DNA from: Laetmonice hystrix
Taxonomy: Eukaryota
DNA: 64,000 nucleotides
Assembly: GCA_965235115.1 (NCBI GenBank)
Contig: OZ249441.1
Span: 27,280,001-27,344,000, forward strand
Reading direction: 5' to 3'
In this document: one piece after another, positions 1 through 42,763 of the stretch
Layout: each line of letters begins with the position of its first letter
Position numbering within the stretch: the stretch's first letter is position 1
Notes under the pieces: generated by a model
What the model was told of the DNA's origin: nothing
Databases searched by the model: none
The model's input: only the letters and a program-made list of their open reading frames with translations
Made by a program: the position numbers and the translations under genes

Positions 1-266
1 TTGATTGATCTTTTCTTGATCAAATCGTACCAGGTCCTCAGTTCCTACATGAAGGATCATCACTTCTGGTTTCAAGGGCTGGAACTTTTTTAGGAGGTCT
101 TCCAGAGTTTTTCCCACAGATGAGAACTGCAGGGTTGGGTACGCTAAATAACGGATGCATGAATTGGATGCATTTTGGGTGAGACCATTTTGGCTGGTGG
201 CCGCCATCTGGGTAACGAGATATATCGTGGCATCACCAAGAATCCACACCTGACGTCGTTCACTGG
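1..266 (-). CDS. SGNH/GDSL-hydrolase-like exon, copy A (truncated by window edge), catalytic Ser replaced by Ala
   Basis: Not in the ORF track. Manual translation after acceptor ttaaacag|CC gives SERRQVWILGDATIYLVTQMAATSQNGLTQNASNSCIRYLAYPTLQFSSVGKTLEDLLKKFQPLKPEVMILHVGTEDLVRFDQEKINQ, colinear with the copy B exon; block I-like WILGDA and block III-like LHVGTED. Confidence 0.85.
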
Positions 267-3200
267 CTGTTTAAGTGCAAAAAAAAATCATTGATTATAA
301 AGCATTGCCAAAAATTGCGATTAAAGAAAAACGTATACGCTCACAAGGTCACTCAATGTAAACGGAAATAGCGACAAATGAAACTTAATATGACTACCTT
401 ACCTTAGTTTATAGACAGTATATGGTTACCTTATATTTAATCGGAACATTAATGTTTTTGAGATATCGCTGGGGTGGGGGCTAAAAACTTTCTATCCAAC
501 ATTCATTGCAGGTATTATTTTCAGAGTTTTGGAGCCAGGACTCATTATTATATAATATGCAACCTTCACTGACCTTTCAAGGTCACTGAAAGTAAAGAAC
601 ATTAGTTTTAAGATAAATATCTCATACGATTTCTAATTTGTGAATTACAGTATAACCTGCACCCTCTTGTTTTTTTTCAAGCTATAGGCCAAAATAGCAT
701 GCGTTACATATTATGGAGAGGAAATAGAACAAATATGGCCATAAATTAGTGTAAAATGTCAACGTTGTATACACTTCTAGGAAATCACTGACCATGGCTA
801 TACAGAAAAACGTAAGTCCAAACAGATGGATGTACGGATCGAAGACAAATCGTACTCCCCTTGAAATTGATGGCTGACAGCAAATCCTTATTAGACAGTT
901 TCCCACATGAACAATAACATTTCCTGAGACGTCAAATTATATTCTGTATTCCCTCTTTCTCAAAAAGATGCCATACAAAAATGTTTCCTTACGTGTCATA
1001 TAATCAAAGTTACAACACATGTCCATAGAATTATATTATATACTTACAACCCTTTCCATTCCAGAGCAGCAGTGGTGGCGGAATGTCGCTCTCATCAAGC
1101 CTCGTCAGGGCAGTTTGTAGTTTTCCACCAGTCCAACCTGGCTTTTTATTTTCCTTAACAGGCCAATCCTTTTCGCGCGTATATTCCACCTTCTCTTTTA
1201 TCATGGCTCTATATGCTGCAGGATTATTCAGTTCCTCCGCAGATATACGCGACGTCTGAAAAGGAAGCATTGCTTGCCTTTCTTTTCGACTAGGCTTTGA
1301 TCCTTGGGAACCAGGCATTGGTCTTTGTGGTCCGGGTCCTTGTGGCATTGGATCTTGTTTTCTGGTCTCATGTGGCAGTGATCCTTGTGGACTGTCCCCA
1401 TGTGGCATTGGCCCTTGCGGACCGAGCCCATGTGACACTTGTCCTTGTGGACCTGGCCCATGTGGCATCGGTCCTTGCAGACCTGTCCCGTGTGGCATTG
1501 GTCCTTGTGGGCCTGGCCCATGTGGCATTGGTCCTTGTGGACCTGGTCCATGTGGCATTGGTCCTTGGGGACCGGGCCCATGGAACATTGGTCCTTGTGG
1601 ACTGGGCCCATAGGGCACTGGTCCTTGTGGACCAGGCCCATGGGGCATTGGTCCTTGCGGACCAGGCCCATGTGGCATTGGTCCTTGGGGACCGGGCCCA
1701 TGGGGCATTGGTCCTTGGGGACCGGGGCCACATGGCATTGGTCCTTGTGGACCGGGGCCACCTGGCATAGGTCCCTGGGGACCGGGTCCATATGGCATTG
1801 GTCCTTGTGGACCCGGCCCAGGTGGCATTGGTCTGGGTGGCATAGGGCCACGAAACATTGGTACAGGTTGCATAGCCCAAGGTGGCATAGCCCTAGGAGG
1901 CATTGTTCCTGGGGGCATGGAGCGAGGTGGCATTGACCCAAGTGGTATAGCCCCAGGCGGCACAGCTCCTGGGGGAAAAGCCCCTGGTGGCATGGCTCCA
2001 AATCGTGGACCACCTGTATTACTGCCACAGAAACGACCTCCTGGAAACTGCTGTCCTGGGACTTGGTATTGCATGCCTTGCTGACCTGGAGGAGTCTGTA
2101 CTGGCTTTTGATGAAAAGGACCAGGACCAGGAAAATGCTGAGGGAAAGGAGATCCCACTGGAGCAGCTGGATTTGGTCCTGTAGGGTTGGGCCATGGGTA
2201 ACCATTCCCTGGTTGCCGATGACTATCTGTATAACGCCGATATTCAGGGCTCCTACCTCTCCGGTTGTTATGCCAGGATCTTGGCGATAAACTGCGACCA
2301 CGGCTGCTGAAGGATGATGAACGACTGCTTGAGCTTAGACTCTCGAGGGACAGGTTCTGATTACGGCACCTCTGCCTGGTGCGAGGTGGAGAAACTGAAA
2401 GACTAATCTGTCGTGCACGGTCCCTCCGGTCCCTCCGTTTTTCTCTGTTTCGTCCCGATTCATTCAGGGGCTTCTTTTCTGAAGTTTTGACACTAACTTT
2501 CTTGACATCTCTACGGGTGTAACTTTTCTTTATGTCTGTCTGCTTTCTCCTGGTTTCCGATTTCTGACTTCTTGTCTTCTTGTTATCTGACACGGTACCT
2601 TTTTTTGAGTGTTCCCTCTTCACCTCTGTATGTTTGGAGGATGCCATTTCTTTAACATTAGCGTCCTTATATACCTTTTTAAATTCTTCTTTTACTTTTA
2701 CTTTGTCTTTTACTTCCGGTTCGCTGTCAGAACCCCCAACTTCTTCTAAAACAGTATATCCCTCTAAACTCATGGCACCTGGTTCCGTGTCCCTAGATAT
2801 CACATCGCTGAAGGTTGACCCTCCAGGATCCTTTATGTCTGTACTCTGTGCAGCTTCTTCATCACGTTTCTGAACTAAGGATATTTCTGGAGACTTTCCT
2901 TTAGTCTTGGAACTTTCCCTTCCCTTTGAATTACGTACTGAAATCCTACTGCTACTTTCTAACCTGGATCTCATGGAGGTTGACCATGACCCCTTTTTAA
3001 CCTTACTCTCCCCTGTCTTTCCCTCCCTGGAGTCTTTCTGATCAGAAGAACTAGCTAACATGGGGGACAAGGAGCGTTTATCAGGTTTCACCACAGCAGG
3101 CGCCTTTGAATGGCCTTTGGACCTTGACTGCCTTCCAGAGCTGGAACGATCCAGAGACTTCGAGCGAGTTCTGTGTCTGTTTGCTGGAGACCTTATCCGG

Positions 3201-6200
3201 AGTCTGTTCCTAGACCGCTCAGGAGACCTTGAACGGAGTCTCTTCCTATGTAGCTCTGGAGATTTTAAACGGAGCTTGTTCCTTGACTGCTCTGGAGACC
3301 TTGAACGGAGTCTGTTCCTAGACCGCTCTGGAGACCTTGACCGGAGTCGGTTCCTGGACCACTCTGGGGATCTTGACCGGAGTCTGTTCCTGGACCACTC
3401 TGGGGATCTTGACCGGAGTCTGTTCCTGGACTGCTCCGGAGATCTTGACCGGAGTCTGTTCCTGGACTGCTCCGGAGATCTTGACCGGAGTCTGTTCCTG
3501 GACTGCTCTGGGGACCTTGACCGGAATCTGTTCCTAGGCCTGTCTGGAGATCTTGAGCGCAGTCTGGTCGAAGGGAGATCTGGAGATCTTGAGCGCAGCC
3601 TGTCCCGAGAGAGATCTGGAGATCTTGCATGTAGTCTGTTCTGAGACAGCTCTGGAGATCTTGATCGCAGTCTGTTCCGAAACAACTCTGGAGATCTTGA
3701 GTACTGTCTGTGCCTAAACAGTTCTGGTGACGTTGACCGCAGCCTAGCAAACTCTGGAGACTGTGACCTCAGTCGATGGCTCAACATCTCGGGCGATCTT
3801 GACCTCAAATGCCACTTCTCACTCGTCATGGTTAGACTCGGTGACCTGGACCTGGATCTAGAAGAATGGTGAGGCAGTGGGCCACTGGGTGCCAAGGACT
3901 GACTGGTGACAGGTTCACTCGGCTGTCTTCCGGAAACTGCTCCTGGGAAAGATGCTGTCAAACTGCTACTTGCAGAAATGGCAGTCATTCCCAAGTAGCT
4001 GATCTCTTGATTTGTAGAACCCACATCATTGGACAGACTTCCATATGGTGAAGGCGTTGGCAGGTTGGTACCGCTCTTCATCTTCAGAATTCCTTTTAAG
4101 CCCGTGGTGCCTGCTGGCGTAACACTGGTAGCCAGTATTTTCTGAGGCAAGTTAGAAGAAGACCACGACGTCTCACTCTGAGTCTCCTCGGCCGCCACTC
4201 CTGTATATTCAGCACAACCATATAGAAACACATTAAAACCAACTAAGAAGCAATGCAGAGAATATAGACAGCATAAGTTCAATATAAAATGAACTAACAA
4301 AAATCCTATCTGAGTTAATGGCTGGAATTTTACTGAAATGGCAACAACTAAATGACAAAAGTACAAGCACAGTGTGTGCCTGTGCTTTTTCCCTCTTTTA
4401 CCTCTTGGATCAGGCTAATTTATTTCTGATATCCCTGCCAGATCGAAGAGGTATCCCTCGAGCTTACTTTCCGCTCACTTCAGTACCTATTCATAAATGT
4501 GCGCTTAAAGCTTCCTGGCATCAATAAGAATCAATAAATCCTTGCACTTGAACAACCAAGCTGTCGTCAACCTGCAGAAGATATGAAGTGGAGTTTGATT
4601 TTGGATTTAACCTCTCTAACGTATCATATCGAGGTGGTCAGATTTTCTGGTGGAAGAAACTGGAGTATGCCAGGGAAAACCACCGACCTTACAGCAGATA
4701 ACGCACAAGCCTGATGTCTGGCTAGAGATACACAGTGGAGACCCCACACTGACGTCAACTGGATACAGTGGTCAACATCTAATTATGGCCACATTGGCTC
4801 AGATATGATTTGTCCCTTCTGTTCCACGTTTGTGAAACACTTGCAATTAGTCTTTCAATCTCAGCTTGCTCTGTTGTGCTGGAGTCACCAAGGCTTCCAG
4901 CTCCACTTCCAGGGCCTAGCTTTTCAGAGATTAAGCTTAAACTTTAGCACGAAATTCGGTTTTGAAAAACTGGGCCCAGATGTGAACTATGAATGGTAAC
5001 TACCATACATTGATTGTGACCCGTTAGGTGCTACAAACCAGATTACCGTCTTCCCTATTGTACATACATCAGACATACACTGTCTCTAGTCTAATCTCTT
5101 ATCAAGGCGTCTTTTCTTCCCCCGTGAATTCACCAAGGTTTGTTTTAAATTATAGCAATTACCAGGATTGACTGGTAACCAGCCGGTTAAAGAAACCTTT
5201 ATTGTAAAACACTTATGCCTCCGAGGGGACACCATGTAACATGCCAATCCTGATATGTCATCACCGAGACCGTACCCCCACAACTGTCTAGAGAGAAAAT
5301 GAGAAAAAGTGACAAAACCGCGATTACGCGGTCGACAGATCAGAAACTTAAATCAAACATATATTTTAACATACCAACATCATAACATCACAACTCCCTG
5401 CAAACAAAGCCAGTCCACATTAAATTATGAGCGGGGTATCACAGCTGGTAATAAAATGTACCAAATTTCTGCTACTGGACCCATTGGAAATTTGTTAACA
5501 CATCAGTTGACAATTTTTGTGTAACGACCAAACTAGACAGACCCTGTTCCTTCTTCTTTTTCCTTCTGCTAGAAAGTCACTCCTCTCATCAGGGCCGTCA
5601 GAACTCTCAGGGCCGAAAGGAACAAAGTTTTTTTCCATGAAAATATTGCGAAAAAAAGGTTATTATATTGCTTTCCAAAGATTGCATATCACTGTGTCTG
5701 AATCAGGTATGCAGTCAGAAAGAAAGGACATTGGGAAGAGAAACGTACTGGGATGCTCCAGTTACCTTTAGAGTGTGGACTCCGGTCAGGTTTATTGACG
5801 TAAAATTCTGGCGGGTTATTAAGTAAGGTGATTTTTCTAACCCCGCTAATTCTTGTAACAACAGATCTCTAGTCTCTTGTAATATTACTGAGGCCTCCTC
5901 ATTTCCCAAAACGTTTTTATTTACTGCAAGCTCAATTATACACTCTCTGTTTACATGTATGTATGTATGTTACAAGGAACGAAAGAACACAAGAACTGTC
6001 AAATAGTTTCAAGGACTGCCACGTACTTGGTTATACTTGTTCAAGTTCACGGAATGTTCACTTCAGGTACAAGATGAAAGCAGACAGCATGTACCCGGGT
6101 ACTCCTTAGCCCAACAAAATTTTGTTGGGCTCTTCCACATACATTACAAAATTGTGCAACACTTGCTAACAGCAATACGAGCAGCAAACGTTTCTTGATG

Positions 6201-9200
6201 TATCATGTTTCTTGATTTATGTTCAATGAGTTCAGCAAAAGTCAATGACTTGACGCATGGCTAATAACGGTGATGAGGTTACAATGGGCAGCCCCTGTCT
6301 CGGCAGTTGGTTCAGTTTCTGCCTTACTCTCAGTTGGCAGCCACTGCACCCAGGCTGCAAACACCAGCCTGAATGCTGTCAGAATACAATTTGCACCAGC
6401 TTCGTTCACATGACACCCATCAACCATGTATAGTCCTTCATCATTCCAATCCTTGTAGTAGTCATGGTCCAGAATATAGTACTTTCTCCCATTTTTACGC
6501 AACAAAGTCTGAACCAGACTGTTCACGTCACACCTCAACTTCTCCGTCTCCTCCAAAGGAACATCGACACCACAGGCAGCATGACGCATTATGATTTTGG
6601 ACCAAATCAATACTACATTTGGCAAGATGGTATAAATGTCTTTGATCAGTTTCAACACACTGTCAAAAATCTGGTCCTTAGAAAGTCGAGCCAGGTCCTC
6701 TGCACCAACATGTAAGGTCAGCACATCCGGAGCACGCTTGCATAGCTGCAGGCACTTCCTAATAGTTGTGCCAACAGTGGAGAATCGCAGGGCTGGATGA
6801 GCGAAGTAACGGAATGAGCTATTTTCGACATTCTGATTGAGACCATGCTTGCTTTGGCTCGCCACCTGGCATACCAAGTAGACTGTCGCATCACCAAGTA
6901 TCCAGACCTGACGACTAAGATCGGCTGTTTAAAGAGAGGAGTGCCAAGATATCAACAAAAATATCAAGAAAGAAAAATTGTACTGCACTGAATTTGCTTG
7001 AGAAGCACCTTTCCCTTTCTGTATTGACTGCACATACATTGGTAAAATAAAATAAAACACAAAGAGCAACATTACAACAGATTGTGAATTTACTGCTATA
7101 CAGTCAGACCTCATTAATACGTGCTTCTGTAATCCGTATACCTCACAATCCGAACACACTTTCTGGTAACCTCTTCTACCATTTTCTATTTAAAATGATT
7201 CAGTAACCCGTATATTTCACAATCCGAACACATTTTAATGGGCACCAAGCTGTTCGGATAAACGAGGTGTGACTGTATATATACTGCTAACACTGAAACT
7301 TAAATCATGTCCCATATCTGGATCTTTTACATTCCAGGTTATAAGTATAATACAATACATCACTTAAAAAGAGAGCATATTTACATTTCTGCAAGTCCCA
7401 CATGTGAAGTGGCGGAATAGAGTCCTTGTTGGTCCTGAGAGCAGTGAGGAGTTTTTTACCAGTCCACCCTGGCTTTGTTCTACAGGCGACAAATTTTGTT
7501 GCTGCCATCTCCATCTTGATTCTGACATCAGAGGACAGTTGAACTCCCGCAAAAGGTAGTGGATTTGCTGAAATATTCCGAAAAGGCATGGGTCCACTAC
7601 CATCCTGGATAATTTCACTGCATTTCAAAACTTCCTTATCACCAGGATTTTGCTGTGCTGGGGCTTTGTCTGGGAGGCGCCGCTGATGTGGAGTAATTTT
7701 TACTGGGACTGGTGCTGATGCTATGATGTTGGATGTGATGCTCAATGCTGGTTTGGCATTAAGCTGCTGACGGCAAGTAATTTTTACTGGGACTGGCTGC
7801 GATGCTGGGTGCTGGTTGCTTGGTGTGGCCTGTCGGCCTCCAGTCCTCAAGGGTTTCCCCTCCTTGGAACTTGATTCTGATGACTCAGGACTTTCTCCAA
7901 TTACTGATGATCTTGAACTTGTCGGTGGTAACTTTACATCTAAAACGGGAGGTTTTTGATTCCATGGCTTGCTTGTCTGGGCTGCTTCTATGCCCGTGCA
8001 ACCTTGTATCACAGTTCGAAAACTTTTGATATTTTTACCTTCCTGGTTGTTTCTGGCTGGTCTTTCTTTGGAAGTTTTTCTTTTCTTTGTGCCTTTTGAT
8101 TTAACTTTATCTTTGTTTCTGCTTAAACTGTTTTGAGTTTCAATGGTTCCTCCAGTCGGCAGATTTCCTATAGAAGCTTTTCCTCCCTTTTTCTTTGAGA
8201 CATCTGGCTCAGTAGGATTTTCCTGCTGTATATGATGTTCTGAATTTTGACTCAACTCACTGCAGCTTCCAGCCTGCTCATCTGATGTCCACACTGGTGA
8301 CAAATTTTCTTCCGAGGTCCACACTGGTGACCACTCTTCGTCTGACGTCCAGACTGGGGACAAACGGACTCTACCGAATCTCACCTCGGTAAAAGGTAAC
8401 TTAGGACTTGGGAAAGACGTGTCACTGATCGAACTCAGGCAACTTGGGCTCCATTCTGATGGAAGACTATGCCTAACCTCAGTAGACGGAATTCTGCTTG
8501 AAGTTGAAGATGATGGTCTTGGATGTTCCACTTTCGACAACTTTTTATCCTGAGCTTTTTTCCTCGATTCTTTCTTAGCTTTCTTTTTTCTCAGACCCCC
8601 TGCCTCGCCAGTTTTTTTTATGCTTGCTGTTTTAATAGATTCAGTCTTTAGACTTCCATAGTCTTTGCAAGCTGTGGACTTTTCATTTGCTGGAGGAAGG
8701 CCTTCAGATGTAACTTCGCCCCATTTTTCATGTTCACTTTCTGAGCTACCAACCTCTTCTACAACAGTAAATTCCTTGAGATCTATGACCTTGCTCTCCA
8801 CACTTAATGTATCACTTGATATACTGGACATGACCTTGCTCTCCACACTTAATGTATCACTTGATATACTGGACATGACCTTGCTCTCCACACTTAATGT
8901 ATCACTTGATATACTGGACATGCTTGAGGTTGACCTTGACCCTCTACAAACAATTGGATGATAACTTCTGTCCTCTGAGGTTAGGTTCCCATGCGACAAA
9001 TACCTGCAAGGCTCTAGAGACCTCGACCACAGTTGGTTCCTTGATCTCTCAGGTGACCTTGAGAGTCGTTGCTTGCAAGGAGATCGTGACCGTATTCTGT
9101 GTCTTGGAGACCTTGATTGCTGTTTGTGCTGAGAGAGGTGCGAGAACCTTGACCGGTGTCTGTCCTGAGAGTTGTCTGAAGACCTTGACCGATGTCTATC

Positions 9201-12200
9201 TCTAGATCGGTTTCGGGACCTTGACCGGGGTCTGTGCCAAGACAGTTCTGGGGGCCTCAACCGCGGACTGTTCCGTGACAAGTCTGGGGACCTTGACCCG
9301 GGTCTGTGCTGAAACAGGCCTGGGGACCTTGACCGTGCTCTGTGCCGAGACAGGCCTGGGGACCTTGACCGTGGTCTGTGCCATGACAAGTCTGGGGACC
9401 TTGACCGTGGTCTGTGCCGAGACAGGCCTGGGGACCTTGACCGTGGTCTGTGCTGTGACAAGTCTGGGGACCTTGACCGTGGTCTGTGCCAAGACAGGTC
9501 TGGGGACCTTGACCGTGGTCTGTGCCAAGACAGGCCTGGGGACCTTGACCGTGGTCTGTGCTGTGACAAGTCTGGGGACCTTGGCCGTGGTCTGTGCCGA
9601 GACAGCTCTGGGGACCTTGACCGTGGTCTGTGCGGAGACAGGCATGGGGACCTTGATCTGCTTCGCTGTGTATCTATTGAAGCTAACGTAGGGAAATCTT
9701 TATCCCTAGGCCATCCTGATTTGCTGGCTCCTAGATCAGCCTGCAATGTAGGTCGACTATTCTCACTTAGAGATGTTACTGTCACATTATTCGTGCCCTG
9801 CTGCATACTTGTTATTGAACTCTCCGTCAATGCTGACACAAAAGACCCCTGTTCTAGAGTGGCAGGACTTTGAATGGCTGCTAATGCATTGCATACGTTG
9901 GCCGATTCCTCTAGCAGGCAAGGATTTGTCTTCTTAAGAATTCCTTTTGGTAACTTCTTGCTCCCCTGGGAAAACTTGAGATCCTGTGTTTGGTTGGCAA
10001 TATCCAAAGAAGGCGACAATTTTGAAGTTGTCACTCCTGTATAACAAGCATATTCAACAATGAGCATTTTACATCAGGAATTGGGAAACAATGCCAGGAT
10101 TCTGTACATTATCATTCACACGCCTCCTTTAAGTTCTTCATACTCAGTCATAGCCGACTATGAAAACCTCTGACCTCTCATGTGCTCTCACCATGTTGTC
10201 AAATACATTACAATACAGCTTTTATTTGCTCCAAAAACAGTGCAGACAAAATGACCTTCAATACACATGGCAGGTAGTAGTGTTTTAGTGCCACAAGACA
10301 ACTTATGTCTCACAGAATTTGCTAACTTGCCCATGTCTCCAAAAATCTGATTTGTCAATATATTCAGGCCTTCCAGCAGACCCTGATGAAAAAGTAGGAG
10401 AAAAATAGGACCACAATTTTGGAAAAAGCAGGAGAAACGTAGGAATTGGGGATAAAAAGTAGGATAAAAGTAGGAGTTTTGCAGGCTTGCAGGAGTAGTT
10501 TTCGTCCTTTACCAACGTTGATAGCATAATAAAGAGAGACCTCTTCAGGCTTGGTGCTGTACGATGCAGAGTCATAGTTTTCGGCCCTCGTGAAGGTGTG
10601 GTGCAGCCGGTCTACAGCTTTGGACCTGCAGTAACTACTCACTACTCCTGCACATTATAGTCTTGCATAATTTATATTATTTATGTATTATGTTAAATGT
10701 GTCAAAAGGATTCTACAAAGATGATTACATGTTAAAATTAGATAAGCTCTGCCTGACTATGACTATAGTCAGTGGAGCTAAAAATTGAGATGTATCACGA
10801 AAAAGTAGGAAAAAGAAGGAATTTCAAGAAAAAAAGTAGGAAAAGTAGGAGCAAGGCCAAAAAAGTAGGAAAAAGTAGGAAAAGTAGGACTGCTGGAAGG
10901 CCTGTATATTATTTCAATTGTTGGTTGCTGTCCTGAAACAACAAATTCACAGAAATGACAAATCATTCCTGAAGCTGTATAAATTTACTTTTAAACAAAG
11001 ACACTACCTGCCAAGTCTTAGGGGTCGATATAACTCCAGTGATGTTCTACCTATCTGAGGGGCGACTCCACTGATACTGTGACAAGGATCTATGAAGACC
11101 AGACCGTGGAAGGAGAAAAACCTTTACTCAGTAAACTAATGATAATATCAAGAGCTTTATACTATCAGGTTTTGAATCTGATTAGTGGCCATAATACTAA
11201 GTTTCTGGCTTAAAGAATTTATTTTTTGTTTGGGGAGCTTTGATTGATTGAATTTTACGACACGACTTTCCACTTGTAATCGTAGTATGATACTAATTTA
11301 TATCGGTCTTTCCCATTTCACTCCTGAATACACAACCTTCAGGCCTCTGAACATTGCGGGAACGATCGTTTCGTTCGCGCATTGCTCACATAGATGTCAC
11401 TTTGCGTAACTTAAACTCTGTTCTTGCAAACTCACTGGTTCTGGTGAAATAGACACAATAATTGACAATCTTTTAATGTCTCCTTCAGCATGCTTCTCAT
11501 ATATCGCTATGTTTATTGAATATTAAAGAAATCCATATCCATGTGTAAGTGATAAGTCTTTTACTGAGTTCACACAGCCTAACAGAACTTTTGTAAATGG
11601 GTTACGCAAAATGAGTGGGTTACCTTAAAAAAAAACATTTATGGGTTACGCACATTTTCAATTTTCAGAGGCCTGACCTTGGCTTCATCACTTGTATAAC
11701 AAAGCAGGCAGATTTTGCCTATGAATGTGTCAATACCTCTGTTTCCACCTCCACATTGAGTTTTACAATGTTAGGTCTTTCCAAGCAAGACAGGGTTACC
11801 ATTTGTGCTCGCCTGTACAGTAGAGTTTTGCATGTTGCTGCTATTTTTACTACCCTGACCTCTTGCATTCCTGGCTTGCGAGCTATTTTACAACCCAACT
11901 CATAAACAGGACCGGTGACGATTGAAATTGCACTGGTCCTTGGAAATTTCTACCAATCCAAACTAATTTCAGCATGTTTTCTAGGGCTGAACACTTGTGT
12001 CACGATATGATACGTAATCATGATACATGACAAACGATACGATACGTATCACAATATTTCTCAATGAAACTAAAAGTGTACTATGCTGAAAATAAAAAAG
12101 AATAGAACAGATCTGGTTAAATTTCAAACATTTTAATAGCTGAGAAGGGGCAAGCAGTGCCTTATAACCTTACATAGCCTTCAGGTTTTTCTTCAAGAGT

Positions 12201-15200
12201 GTAAGTTTGTCAACATTTTCTGCACTTGAGGCAGGACGCTGGGCAGTAACAATGTCCCAAGCAGTTGATCACACTCTTTCAGAAGGCACACAAGTTGCAG
12301 GTATTCCCAGATATGCCATGACTCATGGCGTATAGTTTTGTATCGATACTTTGACATTCATTTCGATGTATCGTATTGGACACAAAATATCGCAATGCAC
12401 CGATATATCGATGAATCGTTTCAGCCCTAATGTTTTCCAGGTATAAGTTAGTCAGAACAGTTCTAAAAGGTTACCTTCAGGCTGGCGGGTATCCTTGGTT
12501 ATTTCAGTGAGTGGGTAAGTGAATCACGCAATCCCTAAATAATGTACAACTGTAGTCTCTGAGAAATTGGAGAAGCAACATCAACACCAGTTGATAAGTA
12601 ATTAACAAATTAATCTACAGTCTGTGACTGTGAACAGTTCTCCTATTTCCAGGAGACGAGAGAAACCCCCACAAAAATAGGCGATTTAAAAGGGAAATAA
12701 AAAAAAGGGCTACGCTGTGGTTCCAAGGAGACAAGGGCTTGATGAAATATCACAGAAAAAGCAATGCAACATGATCATACACTTTCCTCCACGACCATGT
12801 ATCTATGTATTTTTAAAATAAAACAAACTTACTTATTTGAGAGAATTATAGGATAGGTCTATTACTATAATCATGTATGTCAAAGATTACTTTGGCTCTA
12901 CCAAATTCTTCTAACGCTGACCTGAAGTTATATGTCACTGTAAAGCTCTTAGTGATAGTTGGCATCTGACAATTTTCCAGATCAAAAAATTGACCCCTGT
13001 CATGAATGGCATACACTCAAACTCAAAGACCATGCTACGAATTTCAAGATGTTCACAAGCATAGCCCAGGAGGCTATTAAAGCAGGAGTAATGGAGAAGT
13101 ACTAATATTAAATGCGAGACCCAGCATTGAGTTATCAATCAATGGGCAGCTGGTGTCAAGGCCAAACCTCCCGTCTGTGTAAAAGTGTAATAAGCCATTG
13201 TCCAGGGAGGTGTTTCAACAAGTGCGTCAGATCGTCCTACCAGCGATGGACCAAAAATTACAGGCCCTACAACCAAGCGACAGACTGTCTGTTGCCAGTC
13301 GGACGATCCAACACGCTTATTATTAACACTCTCCAGGGCCTTCTTACAGTGAACAACAGATTTGTCCGCCCCCTCTCACCACAAAGGTCTACTTGTGTGA
13401 AAATATATTGAGTCGGAAAGTCAAGATCTACAACGGAGTTTAGAGCTATTCCAAGGAACTGGAGTCTTTCAAGAAATACTAGATAGGTACATTTGTAGAT
13501 GATGATTAAAATTAAAGATTATCAATGGGGCAGGCTTTTCTTTTCTTATTTTTTTCCAAGTATGTGTGGGCTTATGAAAGGTCTTGAACCAACATTTATG
13601 TAACATCCTAATCATACACTTGACACTTTCGATTGAGACCCTAGATATCTTTTGAGGGGTTTGGTATGCTTTGCAAGACTGTCTTTTTTTAATTGTATTT
13701 TCACTCATTCAGTCTTTTAAAAATAATGTAAATAGATCTTTTTCCAAGGCTCAAAGTGACCAGGTGGTCAGATATTGAGCACTGGCTGTTTTATGACCTG
13801 TTATTTTAAAACAAAACCTACTTACTGCCAAGGGATTCTGGCTCTCTTGAAGCTGATGAGTACAGGCGCGAAAAACGTGGCCCATCTTCATAGCTATATT
13901 GGTCTCGGTTCGTGTCTTGGCGATTGTCTTTGAATCTATCACGATCTGCAAAATGGAAGAAGAGAAATATAAGAAAACAGAATAAGACTGATTTTAATAG
14001 AGTTCTTTCCACATGCTGGTACACAAATTCTTCATTGAACAGGCTGGATAGTTGATTTGCACTCTAGATTGAGGGAGGCGCCCTCCAGTTTATGAAGTCT
14101 AAGCCCTTATCTAAAATAACAGCCCATGTCTGCATAATTTTTGAGTTATTGAAAAAAAGAGATATTCTCTGATTGCTTAAAGACATTTTACAGTTGATAA
14201 TTTTAATATTTTATTGCATAATTAAGCATGGCTGGATAAGTGTACTTACTTAAAGTTAATTGCCTCAATTGCTCCTTTTCCTTCCATTCCTGATACTCTT
14301 CTTGCACCTTAAATGAAACAGAATCTCCATAAACAACATGAAAAATTACTACCGGTACATACTTGATAATGTAATTATATAAATGATAATAAAAAAGGTG
14401 TTTATTTTTTTTTACTTTAGAACGTGATTTCAGACACAGTGGTGGAACTGTCTAAAAAAAACAGTTCAACATCATATTTTTAGTCATCAATTTCGTGCAG
14501 TAATTCCCTCCCTTGTGAGAATTAGCAAAAAAACAACCCTTTTTATCCATAGCTAATGTTAATACTAATAATAGAGCATTCTTTTGTACGGTTACAGAGT
14601 AAATCCTACTTACCACCCTGACTAAATTACATGCCAGCTTTTCTGACTCTTCTAACCCTTTTAATGTGGAATGCCTGAAAGTAACAACATGGTGAATAAA
14701 AAATGTGCATTGCAAAAGGAGTTACCCAACATTATCAGGGGTTCAACCTAACCAAAAATTGTTACTAGTAGTGATATCCTTCATCACTAGGCCAGGGGGG
14801 TGTTTCAATATCAGGATTGTCCGACCGGGTGACGGACCATGTCCGACCCAGTCGGACAGGCCTATGGGTGTTTCAATAAACGTTCGATTGGCGTCCGACC
14901 CGGTTGGACTGTCCGACTTTGTAGGACTAGTCGGGAGTTGTCCTAGGCGGCGGTCGGACCAAAAAACATGGCGGACCAACTACTGTTTGATTCTCGACGT
15001 GTATGTCAAATTTGGCTGCCAATTTGAGAAATTCCGCCGTCCTTACTAATGTTTAAAGTCCACTCCTCCTGTAGTGAAGGTTTTCATATGTATTCCTACC
15101 CTTATTAGATGTATCTAATAATCAAAGCATCCACAGACACCGGTTGTTTACAAGTGAACTGATATGCTGCACAATCATGTGGCCTGGCCGGATAGACCCA

Positions 15201-21200: not shown

Positions 21201-23625
21201 TTAGTTTGTGTGCAGCATTTGAAACCTATCTCGGTGCGCACCGAGATAGAGCCATTTCCTATGGTGGGGCGTGTCAGGGTCTCCACAGGCCTTCTGAGAG
21301 AGCCCCATTTGTGCCGTTATCCATGAAAAATTTTGATTTCCTTTGTTGTGAATCTATTTCCATGATAGGTGGGATCACATAAACGTCAACAAAATTAAAA
21401 ATTAAAAAATTGAACTTTTCTTCACGAATAGCACCTTTAAATAATAGTCAACGAAGTTTTGACTTCGACCTTGAGTACAAAAGTTGCTTATTCTATGAGA
21501 AAAAAATTTAGGAAAAAAACATGTACTTACTCTAGGTGTATGTGTAAAGGTTTGTTGCTTGCGATGCCAGAACCCTTGCCCACCAGGATTGCCTTTGCTC
21601 CAGTTATACGTCGTAGATACTCAAGATTTTCTCCCTTCAAATAACAGCATCAGAATATGACATCAATACTTGAGTACTGGAAAAATTATTTGTAATTTTT
21701 TAAATGATAATGTATCACCAGCACTGTAGAGAATGCAACATCAACTTACACTATGGGGGGGGGCATGTCTTTCTTCTGACAAATGGTTACTCGAGGCACA
21801 TTAATTTTCTAAAGCTTCAGGGCTGTCACTAATACGTATACAATAAATTTAATGCATCAAAGACTACTCACAGTTTCACCCAAGACCTTGGAACGAACAT
21901 CAAACTCTGGTGGTGCATCATCCACTCCTATGTAAACGCCCGTTTCATAGTTTTCCATCTAGGAAAAAAAGACAGATTCTGAGGTCAGGATGAATTTTTT
22001 TATAATTTCTGACACTGCATACCTTGGCTTGAAGATCTCGTGCAGCATTTTAGCCATCACAAGGTTAGTCACCATGGTCCATGTTACTCATCATGAACTA
22101 GAAGTCTGGCTGCCACCATTAGCTTTTTCAACACACTGAACATGAAGACAGAAGGGACTGTTCTTTAAAAGCATTCAACACCATAAGTACCAACAGGCGA
22201 GTTCAAGCCAGGCAGGGGTCGATTTCGACGGGAGTCCGTGAGTCCAAGACTCCCAAAAATTGGGACGGACTCCTGGCAGCCACCTGACCAGGAGTCCGGC
22301 TGTCTCCTAGATATTTACACACAGATTGATGCAGGTTTTAACCCAGGACCAGGTGATGATTGCCCAGTCACGGTGAACTGAATATCTGCTACTCAGCAGG
22401 GGTCACAAGACGTTTCACTCAGCCCCCCTCCCCCATCATGGCTTGATTACTTGATTGTTTATGCCAAACTATTATGGCATAACACCGTCTGTAATTGCTT
22501 TTTTTACATCCAGTCACGTTGTATTCCCTATAGGATAGCGGACTCCCACTTTTTTGGGCGGACTCCTAGAGTTTGCAACATGGGAGTCCTGCTGACTCCT
22601 AAAAAATCACACACGAAATTGGCCCCTGCCAGTGGACCATAAAATGAATAACATTACACTGGTACCATCACAAGAAATTAACCTCAAGATTGGTGTACCG
22701 GTAAATATAGTCAACTTTGGTCAGTCTGGGCCATCTCAGTTAGCAGCAACAGTCAACAGAAATTCTTATATTTGCTTTGGGAAAGTGGAAGAGTTATAGT
22801 GTTACAAAATACTGACAGTTTATTGTAAAAAGTAAATGTGTTTGTGACAATGTTATGTGGTTCATTAAATTATAAAAGAAAATGGTCAATAAAACAAGAG
22901 AGAAACAAATCTTTATAATTCTTTAAAGTTTCAGTGACAATGCCTTACCTCTCGTTGCTCTTCCTGCTGTGGCCGTTGCTGCTGGGCCGGAGAAGTTTGC
23001 ATAGTTTGGCCAGAGTTACTGATACTTGGATATCCCAAACCTTGTTGTTGTTTTGCTGTACTTGGCTGCATCATTTGGCTAGAGTTTCTGTTATTGTAGC
23101 CCAGATTTTGCTGTTGGGTCTGTGTAGGCTGGACCATTTGGCCTGAGTTTATGCTACTTGTATATCCCAGGTTTTGTTGTTGCTGTGGTTGAGCAGACTG
23201 CATTCCCTGGCTTGAATTTCGGTTATTAAGGTAACCTATTCCTAAGCTCATTTGTTGATTCTGTGGTTGCGCCACTTGCATCAATTGGCCTGAGTTACTT
23301 GTGTATCCCAGGCCTGCGGCAGACATCCCAGCACTTGGTTGTGTAGCAAACACACCAGGTATAGTACCACTACCCCCAACCTGTAAAATTCCGTAAAGGA
23401 AAATGATTATGAATGTCACCAGCTCTACAGAACACCAGCATAGAAGAGAGTGGCTGATTAAATTCACTTGGGCAGAACTTTGGGCCTACTCTCAAGTGTA
23501 GAGTCATATAATCTAACCAGTAACTTAACTTAATTTCACACAATAGAATTTCCTTAGAACTTAGATAAAAAATAACTTGCCTGAGTTCCTGAAGCACCAA
23601 CATTATAGCTATAGCCTCGAAACAT
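1..23625 (-). CDS. Large multi-exon unnamed gene, 3'-partial: prion-like Q/N region + KH domain + duplicated [RS-repeat + SGNH-like] module; about 2630 aa within the window if it is one ORF
   Basis: Phase-compatible exon chain on minus strand: 23625-23581 (ATG, MFRGYSYNVGASGTQ), 23380-22949, 21958-21872, 21634-21531, 14674-14614, 14307-14250, 13945-13826, 11089-11051 (tentative), 10036-7385, 6924-6328, 5923-5766 and 5283-5163 (tentative), 4200-1048, 266-<1. All have AG acceptors and GT donors (one GC donor). Whether the downstream module (4200-1) belongs to the same transcript or is a second tandem gene is unresolved. Confidence 0.7.
1048..4200 (-). CDS. Giant RS-repeat / Lys-rich / Gly-Pro-Gln-repeat exon, copy A (3153 nt, phase 1-1)
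   Basis: Inside the 1111-aa ORF; acceptor tatacag|GAGTG at 4200, donor T|gtaagt at 1047; length divisible by 3; RSRSPE and GPGPQGPMPH arrays. Confidence 0.9.
1310..1825 (-). repeat. Coding tandem repeat, 30-bp unit (GPGPQGPMPH), about 17 units
   Basis: Plus-strand unit ggtccttgtggaccaggcccatgtggcatt recurs with 30-nt period; it generates spurious long ORFs in other frames. Confidence 0.95.
3165..3820 (-). repeat. Coding tandem repeat, 36-bp unit (RSRSPEQSRNRL), about 18 units
   Basis: Plus-strand unit gatcttgaccggagtctgttcctggactgctccgga with 36-nt period. Confidence 0.95.
4592..4802 (-). mobile_element. Degenerate tRNA-derived SINE-like element
   Basis: Minus strand reads a degenerate tRNA-like head, then ggtcggtggttttccctggcatactccagtttcttccacc (resembles the central domain of V/Meta-type SINEs) and a ...gttaaatccaaaatcaaa tail. 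Family assignment from memory, not from a search. Confidence 0.5.
5163..5923 (-). CDS. Two putative linker exons (5923-5766, 5283-5163) between SGNH copy B and RS exon copy A
   Basis: Open frames (I)NKNVLGNEEASVILQETRDLLLQELAGLEKSPYLITRQNFTSINLTGVHTLK and LWGYGLGDDISGLACYMVSPRRHKCFTIKVSLTGWLPVNP with donors AAG|gtaact and G|gtaatt; phases 1-0 and 0-1 bridge the flanking exons. Acceptor choice is ambiguous. Confidence 0.45.
6328..6924 (-). CDS. SGNH/GDSL-hydrolase-like exon, copy B (597 nt, phase 1-1), predicted catalytically inactive
   Basis: Acceptor ttaaacag|CC at 6924, donor GAG A|gtaagg at 6327. Translation contains QVWILGDATVY (block I, GDS to GDA), LHVGAEDL (block III, GxND to GAED) and DGCH (block V DxxH). 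Confidence 0.85.
7385..10036 (-). CDS. Giant RS-repeat exon, copy B (2652 nt, phase 1-1)
   Basis: Inside the 920-aa ORF; acceptor tatacag|GAGTG at 10036, donor T|gtaaat at 7384; shares start, KGILK, TVxEEVG and PGWTG motifs with copy A. Confidence 0.9.
8785..8919 (-). repeat. Perfect coding triplication, 45-bp unit (MSSISSDTLSVESKV x3)
   Basis: atgaccttgctctccacacttaatgtatcacttgatatactggac occurs three times in tandem. Confidence 0.95.
9020..9665 (-). repeat. Coding tandem repeat, 36-bp unit (RSRSPDLSWHRP), roughly 15-19 units including degenerate ends
   Basis: Plus-strand unit gaccttgaccgtggtctgtgccaagacaggtctggg with 36-nt period. Confidence 0.95.
10365..10904. mobile_element. Non-autonomous hAT-like MITE with 6-bp TSD
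   Basis: TIR CAGGCCTTCCAGCAG / CTGCTGGAAGGCCTG; TSD tatatt at 10359-10364 and 10905-10910; subterminal aaaagtagga repeats. Confidence 0.85.
11340..11675. mobile_element. Non-autonomous hAT-like MITE with 5-bp TSD
   Basis: TIR CAGGCCTCTGAA / TTCAGAGGCCTG; TSD acctt at 11335-11339 and 11676-11680. Confidence 0.85.
11982..12429. mobile_element. hAT MITE with canonical 8-bp TSD
   Basis: TIR TAGGGCTGAA / TTCAGCCCTA; TSD atgttttc at 11974-11981 and 12430-12437; subterminal gatac/gtatc repeats. A partial relative begins near 19193. Confidence 0.9.
13206..13333. mobile_element. Small PIF/Harbinger-like MITE
   Basis: Degenerate TIR ggaggtgtttcaacaag / cttattattaacactctc flanked by CAG on both sides; related to the element at 14796. 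Confidence 0.55.
14250..21958 (-). CDS. KHDC4/SF1-type (type I) KH domain encoded by four exons (21958-21872, 21634-21531, 14674-14614, 14307-14250)
   Basis: Spliced translation MENYETGVYIGVDDAPPEFDVRSKVLGET|GENLEYLRRITGAKAILVGKGSGIASNKPLHIHLE|HSTLKGLEESEKLACNLVRV|VQEEYQEW; follows the pattern of the second KH of KHDC4/BLOM7 as I recall it (LFVG..FNV..KV.G...YL.HI...TGAKV.L.GKGSG..P..I.I.H....GL..A..L..NL...V..EY). Phases 0,0,2,0,1 are all compatible. Confidence 0.85.
14796..15648. mobile_element. PIF/Harbinger-like non-autonomous element
   Basis: TIR GGGGGTGTTTCAATA / TATTGAAACACCCCC, flanked by CAG (left) and CTG (right); subterminal gtccgac repeats; a second TIR-like copy near 14866. Confidence 0.75.
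16012..19179. mobile_element. Large fold-back DNA element with about 1.1-kb inverted arms
   Basis: Ends AGGGTCATTCCATATGAACTCAACC / GGTTGAGTTCATATGGAATGACCCT; left arm 16012-17117 is the reverse complement of 17281-19179 once the nested insertion is removed; about 160-bp spacer; no transposase ORF; TSD not resolved. Confidence 0.9.
18236..19090. mobile_element. Tc1/mariner-type MITE nested in the right arm of the fold-back
   Basis: TIR TCGGGTGGATAAAAAAAAACGCCC / GGGCGTTTTTTTTTATCCACCCGA with TA duplication; removing it plus one TA restores colinearity with the left arm (cattatatatgtaaagg vs cattatatgtgtagagg). Confidence 0.9.
19480..20696. mobile_element. Non-autonomous hAT-like element with 6-bp TSD
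   Basis: TIR CAGGGATGAAAGT / ACTTTCATCCCTG; TSD cttata at 19474-19479 and 20697-20702; subterminal aaatttcctgaaa motifs. Confidence 0.85.
21097..21436. mobile_element. Kolobok-like MITE
   Basis: TTAA|AGGTGCTATTCGT ... ACGAATAGCACCT|TTAA. Confidence 0.8.
22213..22628. mobile_element. hAT-like MITE with probable 5-bp TSD
   Basis: TIR CAGGGGTCGATTTCG / CGAAATTGGCCCCTG; flanks ccagg and ccagt (4/5 match); subterminal ggactcc/ggagtcc repeats. Confidence 0.7.
22949..23625 (-). CDS. First two coding exons of the KH-RS-SGNH gene (start exon plus Q/N/S/GY-rich repeat exon) joined by a GC-AG intron
   Basis: aaccATG TTT CGA with an in-frame TGA upstream; donor CAG|gcaagt at 23580; acceptor ttttacag|GTT at 23380; donor GAG|gtaagg at 22948; 432-nt exon. 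Confidence 0.75.
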
Positions 23626-41450: not shown

Positions 41451-42240
41451 AATAATAATAATAATAATTTATTCCATTTATATAGCGCAATTATACATAG
41501 AGTTTCTATGCGCTTAACAACATAATAAAGCACAATCATATTTAAAAAATACTGACCTTTAAAACTTTAAAAAGACTACGATTATAGACACCAAAAAGTT
41601 AAAAAATAACAGGCATATCACAGCCATGAAGATGTAGAAGAATTAAAAGATTGACTAATCAAACGCTTCTTTGAATAAAAATGTCTTAAGATGTTTTTTA
41701 AAAACTGTTTGGCTTTGTGAGGCACGCATGTAAGCTGGCAGCTGGTTCCACAGTTTAGCGCCAAAAGTTTGAATGGAACGCGTTCCGTAGCCATTGGAGG
41801 CTTTGGGAATCTCCAAGAGCCAAGGGTCAGAGGACGATCTCAGTGTCCGGCGTGGAACATAAACATGGAATAGATCCTTTAAATAGCTCGGCGCGGTTTC
41901 CATGTGCAAGGCTTTCTGAATGGTAGTCAGGACCTTGAAAGTGACTCGCTGACGTACCGGGAGCCAGTGCAGGTGGTAGAGCACAGGTGTTATATGCTCG
42001 CGGCGTCGTGTGCCTGTCAGAAGGCGGGCAGCATTGTTCTGTAGTATCTGAAGACGGTTTAGACCTTTATCTGGGACACCCAGAAGCAGACCGTTATGGA
42101 AATCTAGCCGAGATGTTACAGTGGCATTGATGACTTTGGCGCATGCCTCATGGGTGAGATGATAACGGATCTTAGCAATACGCCTGAGATGATAGTAGGC
42201 CTTCTGGATCACAGCACTGATTTGTTGGTCCGTGATTTGT
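41451..42240 (-). mobile_element. 5'-truncated L2-clade LINE (C-terminal end of ORF2, 3' stem-loop and (ATT)n tail)
   Basis: ORF 41655-42293 contains the typical L2/CR1 post-RT region (SRLDFHNGLL, LQILQNNAARL, HITPVLYHLHWLPVRQRVTFKVL, LWNQLP, FKKHLKTFLF); 3' agcgca...tgcgct stem followed by an attattatt tail at 41451-41468. Confidence 0.9.
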
Positions 42241-42763
42241 TTCTTTTCCCCTTGCTTTCGGATACCCTTTTGTGGACGCAGGCCAGATGACATCCCATTG
42301 CCCTTGGTGCCCCTCCTTGGTTGGAGAAGTAAATTTGGCGTGGTGCCCTTCCAAACTTGTTGAAAATGTGGTGCCCTCCTTTTAACAAGGTCCTCCCCGA
42401 GGACAATTTTTGCCCCCTTTAAGTTCTAATTCGAGGCCTGTGATATCAGTATAATTAAGTTAGGCCCTAGATCCTCAACCTATTGTCACTGTCAGTGTCA
42501 CAGTGTCAGTGCCAAGAACTTGAAGAAGGCAAGATCGAGAGCCAATGAGTAAAATCATAGACCTAGAATAAAAGCAAAGAGTAGTCAGTAGGCCTAAGAC
42601 AGTTGAACTTGAAGACTGAGCTAGAGTCTACTAAGTCTAAGAATCTATCTAGACTATACCTTTAGACGTGGGACCGAAAAATCTATCTACCGTCTACTAA
42701 CTCGTGAGACTCATCTCTCACACTCATAGGCTAGTCACTGTTCACACAGTCACCCATACTCAC

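What the first reader, a model, noticed from the sequence alone, without database searches (positions are those of the whole stretch)
1..6924. Both SGNH copies carry the same inactivating changes (GDS to GDA, GxND to GxED)
Seen: copy B has WILGDATVY, LHVGAEDL and an intact DGCH; copy A (1-266, absent from the ORF track) has WILGDATIY and LHVGTEDL. The copies are otherwise clearly diverged, yet both keep Ala at the nucleophile position and Glu at the oxyanion Asn. Established: the block I Ser is the SGNH nucleophile. Inference: the loss predates the duplication and the fold is kept for a non-catalytic role (RNA, lipid or protein binding).
Basis: partly seen in the sequence, partly recalled or inferred. 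Interest (0 to 1): 0.75.

Follow-up and report, generated by a model that had tools for sequence, protein, structure and literature searches.

The report
Dead SGNH domain on RNA-binding protein
Two tandem copies of a gene's last two exons each end in an esterase-shaped domain that lost its catalytic residues long before the duplication yet is still kept by selection, probably as a binding module of an RNA-binding protein, much as in the fly protein Oskar.

Summary
On the minus strand, copy B (6242-6924) reads WILGDATVY / LHVGAEDL / DGCH. Copy A (1-266, cut by the window edge) reads WILGDATIY / LHVGTEDL.

An exhaustive HMMER search puts the Ala at the nucleophile Ser column and the Glu at the oxyanion Asn column.

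The copy B model (pLDDT 88) is a full SGNH fold: Z 18.9 to solved SGNH hydrolases and 16.4 to Oskar's OSK domain.

The copies are 53% identical, with dN/dS about 0.3, so they are not decaying. Their nearest relatives, in at least one other animal assembly, are dead too. They share the phase-1 intron, a motif just before it and an Arg-rich exon.

Three KH-domain exons upstream are collinear with one of those loci. The gene is therefore probably a KH plus RS-rich RNA-binding protein with a dead SGNH C-terminus, whose last two exons are tandemly duplicated here.

The nearest active relatives sit in retrotransposons. The reading "loss predates duplication, non-catalytic role" is supported, but the ligand is unknown.

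The scan noted this same stretch before (s1-330544, s1-334751, s1-334677).

The parts
6242..6924 (-). Copy B terminal exon: a complete SGNH-fold domain (GDA, block II Ala/Ala, GAED, DGCH), a disordered tail of about 30 residues, and the TGA stop at 6244-6242.
1..266 (-). Copy A terminal exon, first 88 codons only (GDA, block II Ala/Thr, GTED). The rest lies beyond the window start.
7385..10036 (-). Copy B large exon. The acceptor is tatacag|GAGTG (phase 1). It holds a 12-residue RS array (RSRSPxLSxHRP, 36-nt unit, about 15 copies, 9109-9656). It ends in the motif KPGWTGKKLLTALRTNKDSIPPLHMWDLQK and the donor T|GTAAGTAT (phase 1).
1048..4200 (-). Copy A large exon, with the same acceptor and donor sequences and phases as copy B. 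It holds an RS array (3184-3700) and a GPGPQGPMPH array (30-nt unit, 17 copies, 1314-1833). It ends in KPGWTGGKLQTALTRLDESDIPPPLLLWNGKG.
21872..21958 (-). KH-domain exon 1 (MENYETGVYIGVDDAPPEFDVRSKVLGET), collinear with L003 3218-3313.
21531..21634 (-). KH-domain exon 2 (GENLEYLRRITGAKAILVGKGSG...). It matches Pfam KH-I_KHDC4-BBP at E 4e-5 and is 67% identical to L003 4495-4611.
14614..14674 (-). KH-domain exon 3 (HSTLKGLEESEKLACNLVRV), collinear with L003 4939-5010. The three exons join in frame to 84 residues.

Best explanation
Each of the two tandem cassettes on the minus strand is a large Arg/Ser-rich exon followed by a single terminal exon. That terminal exon encodes a whole SGNH-fold domain that can no longer work as a serine esterase.

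The nucleophile Ser is Ala. The oxyanion Asn is Glu. The block II glycines are replaced.

This state was inherited. It was already present in the common ancestor shared with related genes of other invertebrates, well before the local duplication. Since then the domain has evolved under purifying selection.

The cassettes most likely belong to a gene whose upstream exons encode a KHDC4/BBP-type KH domain. The product would then be an RNA-binding, RS-rich protein.

Its C-terminal pseudo-esterase would act as a binding or scaffolding module in a ribonucleoprotein. This is the same logic as the OSK domain of Oskar, reached independently.

The module was probably captured from a retroelement-borne SGNH esterase gene.

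Shown: the substitutions, the fold, the selection, the shared gene architecture and the collinearity.

Inferred: the physical link between the KH exons and the cassettes in one mRNA, the use of the two cassettes as alternative 3' ends, the retroelement origin, and the binding role and its ligand.
For: - The motifs are placed on the catalytic columns by homology.
- ZfL2-1 ORF1p esterase is the best solved relative by sequence (4c1b, E 0.058). Its catalytic residues are S143, G165, N195, D279 and H282 (PMC3905857).
- In a model SGNH lipase, Ser10Ala, Asn82Ala and His216Ala each abolish activity, while Gly54Ala does not (PMC10779480).
- The AF2 model has pLDDT 88 and pTM 0.83. 177 PDB chains match at E<=0.001, and all 50 listed are SGNH/GDSL-type or designs built on that scaffold. 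VIA gives Z 18.9 at the top, 18.6 for PAF-AH Ib alpha and 16.4 for OSK 5a4a.
- dN/dS between A and B is 0.26-0.34. No bootstrap replicate reached 1. Third-codon-position identity is 49% against 77% at second positions.
- The dead relatives P0004 and P0010 are 57% identical, with dN 0.34 and dS saturated.
- The same phase-1 intron lies 5-7 residues before the V/I-W-h-h-G-D strand in the window copies A and B, in L001 and in L003.
- The motif PG[WM]xGxxLxxxLxxxD...P-hhhh precedes that intron in all four. L005 carries a weaker, looser version.
- An Arg-rich or RS-rich exon lies upstream in L001, L003 and L005.
- The KH exons 1-3, the Arg-rich exon and the SGNH exon are collinear between the window and L003.
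- Other dead or half-dead relatives are joined to SAP+RRM (Tubulanus P0006), an RGG box (P0114) or a CCHC-like knuckle (P0144).
- The nearest active relative, P0023, lies in a reverse transcriptase plus tyrosine-recombinase element.
Against: - No expression or splicing data exist. The KH exons cannot splice directly to the large exons, because KH exon 3 ends in phase 0 and the large-exon acceptors are phase 1. Unseen exons must lie between.
- Copy B keeps an intact Asp-x-x-His, whereas its dead relatives have lost the His. Some chemistry is therefore not excluded.
- The domain is near neutral (pI 7.7), while the family median is pI 9.5. Direct RNA binding by the domain itself gets no support from charge.
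- dS is about 1.1-1.4 over only 82 codons, so the omega value is rough.
- The dead clade consists of long branches, so long-branch attraction could inflate its monophyly.
- Block V of copy A was not seen.
Confidence: 0.72

Rival explanations
1. The domain is still a hydrolase with unconventional machinery. The retained Asp168-His171 pair of copy B would work with another nucleophile, for example Thr13 after GDA, Cys170 or activated water.
For: DGCH is intact in copy B. Thr follows GDA in both copies. P0010 and P0114 have Thr at the nucleophile position itself.
Against: Three elements are changed at once: Ser, Asn and the block II glycines. The Asn replacement is an acidic Glu, which would repel an oxyanion. 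Single Ser10Ala or Asn82Ala changes abolish activity in a model SGNH lipase. Thr13 is not conserved in the dead relatives, which have F, A or Q there. Those relatives have also lost His, to Tyr. The property kept across the clade is therefore not catalysis.
Confidence: 0.08
2. The exons are decaying remnants of a duplicated or transposon-derived esterase gene, and the shared substitutions are just early steps of decay.
For: Pfam scores fall below the gathering cut-offs (19.1 bits against 32.9). Copy B sits on a very long terminal branch (1.63). This genome is rich in retroelement SGNH genes (notes found).
Against: dN/dS is about 0.3, with the upper bootstrap bound at 0.59. The adjoining exons have intact open frames of 1111 and 920 codons. 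Acceptor and donor sequences and phases are identical in both cassettes. The model is confident. The same architecture is kept in other species under omega of 0.19 or less.
Confidence: 0.06
3. The two copies share Ala and Glu because of gene conversion or parallel change after the duplication, not because the ancestor already had them.
For: Tandem copies 6 kb apart could exchange sequence. The WILGDAT and LHVG-ED stretches are the best conserved parts of the alignment.
Against: dS is above 1 and amino-acid identity is 53%, which argues against recent conversion. The Ala codons differ (GCC against GCG). The outgroups P0004 and P0114 also carry Glu at the Asn site, and none of the clade has Ser.
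Confidence: 0.04

Closest known systems
OSK domain of insect Oskar (PDB 5a4a; Pfam PF17182)
   Same: An SGNH-like fold without a working catalytic site, placed at the C-terminus of a protein that organises ribonucleoprotein complexes. Structural match Z 16.4 over 161 residues. Described as catalytically inactive in PMC2848206.
   Different: No sequence membership: no PF17182 hit at E<=1. The partner domains are KH and RS repeats rather than LOTUS. Oskar lost Ser and His, while copy B lost Ser, Asn and Gly but keeps Asp-His. The copy B domain is near neutral rather than evidently basic. The nearest active relatives are retroelement genes of animals, so the origin is independent.
Esterase domain of retrotransposon proteins (ZfL2-1 LINE ORF1p, PDB 4c1b; SGNH ORFs of tyrosine-recombinase retroelements)
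   Same: 4c1b is the best solved relative by sequence (E 0.058). The LHVG-x-D block aligns with it. The nearest active relative in the tree (P0023) lies in a reverse transcriptase plus tyrosine-recombinase element. Both are paired with RNA-binding modules.
   Different: The retroelement esterases keep S, G, N, D and H and are active (PMC3905857). Here the domain is a spliced terminal exon of a host gene, with an intron conserved between species, and the site is dead.
PAF acetylhydrolase Ib alpha subunits
   Same: Among the closest solved folds (Z 18.6, 16-18% identity). From my own knowledge, not tested here: the Drosophila alpha homologue (Q9VXP4, rank 3) is itself reported to be catalytically inactive.
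   Different: A different family by sequence, with no LIS1 context. PAF-AH subunits are stand-alone proteins of about 230 residues, not C-terminal modules of RS-rich proteins.
KHDC4 (BLOM7) / BBP-SF1 type KH proteins
   Same: The upstream exons encode a KH domain that matches Pfam KH-I_KHDC4-BBP (E 4e-5 on one exon).
   Different: The score is below the gathering cut-off because only a 40-residue exon was scored. No paper in the library joins KHDC4 with SGNH. Orthology to KHDC4 was not tested.

Membership tests
SGNH/GDSL hydrolase superfamily | Three-layer alpha/beta/alpha fold with a parallel sheet | tested here: met
   AF2 pLDDT 88. Foldseek finds 177 PDB chains at E<=0.001, and all 50 listed are SGNH/GDSL-type or designs on that scaffold. 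VIA Z up to 18.9 over 176 residues.
SGNH/GDSL hydrolase superfamily | Block I nucleophile Ser (GDS) | tested here: not met
   Ala in both copies, on a column that is Ser in 114 of 135 homologous domains.
SGNH/GDSL hydrolase superfamily | Block II oxyanion Gly | tested here: not met
   The near-invariant G41 and G44 are Ala/Ala in B and Ala/Thr in A. Gly-to-Ala alone did not abolish activity in SrL.
SGNH/GDSL hydrolase superfamily | Block III oxyanion Asn (GxND) | tested here: not met
   Glu in both copies, on a column that is Asn in 127 of 164 domains.
SGNH/GDSL hydrolase superfamily | Block V Asp-x-x-His | tested here: met
   DGCH in copy B, on the D and H columns. Copy A could not be tested because that part lies outside the window.
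SGNH/GDSL hydrolase superfamily | Pfam Lipase_GDSL / Lipase_GDSL_2 score above the gathering cut-off | tested here: not met
   19.1 bits against 32.9, and 16.9 against 23.6. Homology nevertheless follows from phmmer hits: 204 at E<=0.001, best single-domain hit 76 bits.
OSK domain (Oskar) | Sequence match to PF17182 | tested here: not met
   No OSK hit at E<=1. The similarity is structural only.
OSK domain (Oskar) | LOTUS/OST-HTH partner domain in the same protein | tested here: not met
   Pfam finds no domain in the two large exons. The upstream domain that was found is KH. The exons between the KH exons and the large exons were not all identified.
OSK domain (Oskar) | Basic RNA-binding surface | tested here: inconclusive
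   Only composition was computed: pI 7.7 and net charge +1 for residues 1-196.
Retroelement esterase (LINE ORF1p ES / YR-retroelement SGNH ORF) | Encoded inside a retroelement next to a reverse transcriptase | tested here: not met
   It is a spliced terminal exon whose phase-1 intron is conserved in other species' loci. The only transposon-like ORF seen at the ORF sizes listed is at 41655-42293, far from the cassettes.
Retroelement esterase (LINE ORF1p ES / YR-retroelement SGNH ORF) | Intact catalytic S, G, N, D, H | tested here: not met
   See the rows above. ZfL2-1 keeps all five.

The most novel reading that the evidence does not exclude
Retroelement SGNH esterases may have been captured repeatedly as single 3'-terminal exons by RNA-binding protein genes of animals. 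The cases seen here are KH/RS in this window, SAP-RRM in a nemertean, and RGG and CCHC types elsewhere.

In the lineage of this window the domain would have become a pseudo-enzyme whose former oxyanion hole carries a conserved acidic residue (Glu in four of five clade members, Asp in the fifth). That would turn the old active-site pocket into a receptor for a cationic ligand. The ligand could be the protein's own Arg-rich/RS repeats or a lipid head group.

The two tandem cassettes would be alternative 3' ends. Each would give one KH protein a different repeat region and a different pseudo-esterase. This would be an Oskar-like solution reached independently outside insects.
Probability: 0.2. 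Interest if true: 0.7.

Novelty: new variant of a known kind. Interest (0 to 1): 0.5.

Why it matters
Catalytically dead SGNH domains in ribonucleoprotein proteins are known essentially from one case, Oskar's OSK domain, whose origin and ligand are still debated.

A second, independent family offers a natural comparison for what an esterase fold contributes to RNA-protein assemblies once chemistry is lost. This family is under purifying selection and is joined to KH and RS modules. Its nearest active relatives are retroelement genes.

It would also be a clear example of domain domestication from mobile elements.

The practical value is modest until expression and binding are measured. The family is sparsely sampled: this window plus three protein clusters from at least one other assembly.

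Tried and rejected
- Word-indexed protein searches gave nothing new. Copy B alone had no hit. The profile of dead domains returned P0114 and one weak hit. The profile of P0004, P0010 and P0114 returned only those three. Only the exhaustive HMMER search found relatives.
- Pfam found no domain in either large exon or in the large exon of L007.
- I looked for a conserved 5' exon shared by the stretch upstream of large exon A (4200-6245) and the stretch upstream of large exon B (10000-16000). Blastn and tblastx found nothing. A private promoter exon for copy A is therefore neither shown nor excluded.
- I tested whether the Tubulanus SAFB-like N-terminus (SAP, RRM) is encoded in the window. Only the SGNH part matches.
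- I scanned the 150 listed hits for a KH+SGNH protein and found none.
- An OSK-like basic domain is not supported by net charge.
- Active-site geometry (His171 to Thr13 or Ala12, position of Glu75) could not be measured, because model coordinates are not exposed to scripts.


Full report
**Anatomy**

The window is eukaryotic DNA with about 40% G+C, introns and a LINE tail. I did not test that.

On the minus strand there are two tandem cassettes.

- Cassette B is a large exon (7385-10036) followed by a terminal exon (6242-6924, stop TGA at 6244-6242).
- Cassette A is a large exon (1048-4200) followed by a terminal exon that starts at 266 and runs off the window after 88 codons.

Both large exons start at the same acceptor, tatacag|GAGTG, in phase 1. 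Both end at the same donor, T|GTAAGTAT, in phase 1. Both terminal exons start at aacag|CC.

The large exons are open for 1111 and 920 codons. Each carries a 36-nt, 12-residue Arg/Ser array of about 15 units. Copy A also has seventeen 10-residue GPGPQGPMPH units.

**The observation**

The copies are 53% identical over 83 residues.

Pfam sees the GDSL families only weakly, at 19.1 bits against a cut-off of 32.9. An exhaustive phmmer search of 1.84 billion representatives found 204 proteins at E<=0.001.

On the resulting alignment:

- the Ala sits on a column that is Ser in 114 of 135 domains;
- the Glu sits on a column that is Asn in 127 of 164;
- the D and H of DGCH sit on columns that are D in 126 and H in 121.

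The best solved relative by sequence is the esterase of the zebrafish LINE ZfL2-1 ORF1p (4c1b, E 0.058). Its catalytic residues are S143, G165, N195, D279 and H282 (PMC3905857).

The two glycines of block II, which are at least 90% conserved in the family, are Ala/Ala in B and Ala/Thr in A.

In a model SGNH lipase, Ser10Ala and Asn82Ala each abolish activity, while Gly54Ala does not (PMC10779480). The Ser and Asn changes are therefore the ones that count.

**Fold**

AlphaFold2 on a 71-sequence alignment gives pLDDT 88 and pTM 0.83 for copy B. Only the last 20 residues (207-226) fall below pLDDT 50.

Foldseek finds 177 PDB chains at E<=0.001. All 50 listed are SGNH/GDSL-type or designs on that scaffold.

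The second-look aligner gives Z 18.9 for the best chain, 18.6 for PAF acetylhydrolase Ib alpha and 16.4 for the OSK domain of Oskar.

**Selection**

Between A and B, dN is 0.36-0.38 and dS is 1.1-1.4, so omega is 0.26-0.34. The bootstrap 95% interval is 0.15-0.59, and no replicate reached 1.

Identity by codon position is 63%, 77% and 49%. This is the signature of a coding sequence under constraint.

dS is close to saturation and only 82 codons are available, so the number is rough. It is nevertheless clearly not 1.

**Relatives**

The best single-domain hits are themselves dead.

- P0004 (a Logan assembly) reads GDM / GAEE / NGFY.
- P0010/P0163 (ENA assembly ERZ25767047) reads GDT / GADD / SGFY.
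- P0114/P0168 (the same ENA assembly) reads GDT / GTED and has Tyr in place of His.

In a maximum-likelihood tree, copy B groups with these three at SH-aLRT 88. That group lies inside an 11-row clade (SH-aLRT 93). The clade also holds the Tubulanus and Amphiura domains and three small stand-alone SGNH proteins with intact sites. All the dead rows have long branches, so attraction is a caveat.

P0004 and P0010 are 57% identical, with dN 0.34 and dS saturated. Their omega is at most about 0.19.

Their loci show the same gene architecture as the window:

- an Arg-rich low-complexity exon (RD/RE-rich in L001, RS/RK-rich in L003, an 843-codon RS-rich exon in L005);
- ending in the motif PG[WM]xGxxLxxxLxxxD...P-hhhh, with a looser version in L005;
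- then a phase-1 intron 5-7 residues before the first strand of the domain;
- then the whole domain in one exon.

The loss of Ser and Asn is therefore older than the local duplication and older than the split from those species.

The acidic residue at the Asn site is conserved: E, E, E, E, D. The nucleophile site drifts: A, A, T, M, T. This is what one expects if catalysis was lost and the acidic residue acquired a use.

**Gene context**

Following a first-reader note (s1-334677), I looked upstream. Three exons at 21872-21958, 21531-21634 and 14614-14674 join in frame to an 84-residue KH domain. The middle exon matches Pfam KH-I_KHDC4-BBP at E 4e-5.

tblastx shows the same three exons, in the same order and on the same strand, upstream of the Arg-rich exon and the dead SGNH exon in L003. 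Identities are 59-62% (tblastx), and 67% for exon 2 by tblastn.

This collinearity across species is the evidence that the KH domain, the Arg-rich region and the dead SGNH domain form one gene.

It is not proof for the window. KH exon 3 ends in phase 0 and the large exons need phase 1, so further exons lie between.

Only one KH set exists for the two cassettes. No conserved exon was found in the 1.9 kb between the stop of B and large exon A. AATAAA signals lie 323 and 448 nt after the stop of B.

The most economical reading is one gene with two alternative 3' cassettes. That needs cDNA to confirm.

**Origin and recurring partners**

The nearest relative with an intact site that I traced is P0023. 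It is present in many copies. It lies at both ends of an element that encodes a reverse transcriptase (RVT_1, E 2e-15) and a weak tyrosine-recombinase match (E 4e-4).

Other relatives are joined to RNA-binding modules:

- SAP+RRM in a SAFB-like protein of the nemertean Tubulanus polymorphus (P0006, GDS / GIID / DSKD);
- an RGG box in P0114;
- a CCHC-like knuckle in P0144;
- cold-shock domains in fish proteins that keep GHS / GGND / DGVH.

The pairing of this SGNH lineage with RNA-binding parts is thus recurrent. That fits a retroelement ORF1-like origin and a role in ribonucleoprotein complexes.

The domain of copy B is itself near neutral (pI 7.7, against a family median of 9.5). I therefore do not claim that it binds RNA directly.

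**Verdict**

The interpretation (ancestral loss, fold retained for a non-catalytic role) is supported by outgroups, gene structure, a structure model and codon analysis.

Still open are the ligand, the isoform structure, block V of copy A, and whether the Asp-His pair kept in copy B has any use.

No paper in the held library joins KHDC4 with SGNH. Dead SGNH domains in RNP proteins are documented for Oskar (PMC2848206).

I class this as a new variant of a known kind, of moderate interest.

Noticed in passing
window 22934-23485 (-): A Gln-rich, prion-like open frame with repeated GYxxNSGQxMQ units, upstream of the KH exons on the same strand. It has no Pfam hit. Whether it is an exon of the same gene is unknown.
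   Followed up: partly
window 41655-42293 (-): A 212-residue ORF that looks, by eye and from my own recall, like the C-terminal tail of a non-LTR retrotransposon reverse transcriptase (...LDFHNGLLLGVPDKGLNRLQILQNNAARLLTG...). No search was run on it.
   Followed up: no
window 58828-60093 (-): A 421-codon Pro/Gln-rich open frame ending in a WH2-like motif (SDLLAAIRTG). It may be an exon of an actin-regulator gene of the WASP/WIP type, by eye only. Local G+C rises to 53%.
   Followed up: no
window 8785-8922 (-): Three perfect 45-nt tandem units (100% matches) inside large exon B, encoding SSISSDTLSVESKVM three times. They are much younger than the rest of the exon.
   Followed up: no
L009 228-770 (-) and 4071-4613 (+); L010 the same: A retroelement with reverse transcriptase and a weak tyrosine-recombinase match. 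It carries 180-residue ORFs of equal length in inverted orientation at both ends. The downstream one is the intact SGNH protein P0023. Whether the upstream one is identical was not checked.
   Followed up: partly
P0001, P0003, P0007, P0008 (gecko proteins, 1300-3100 residues): Uncharacterised gecko proteins hold up to six tandem repeats of an SGNH-like unit (PRVWICGDSLVVSAQ...). Most matches cover only the N-terminal half of the domain, and several have Glu or Lys at the Asn site.
   Followed up: no
P0021, P0039, P0058, P0076, P0093 (fish proteins): Teleost proteins of 1100-1960 residues combine CSDE1-type cold-shock domains with a C-terminal SGNH domain that keeps GHS / GGND / DGVH.
   Followed up: partly
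L004 (Tubulanus polymorphus OZ123229.1): A SAFB-like gene (SAP + RRM + Glu/Arg coiled region) whose isoform X1 ends in an SGNH domain. The domain matches copy B as one uninterrupted stretch, consistent with a single exon. It keeps GDS but has lost Asn and His.
   Followed up: partly
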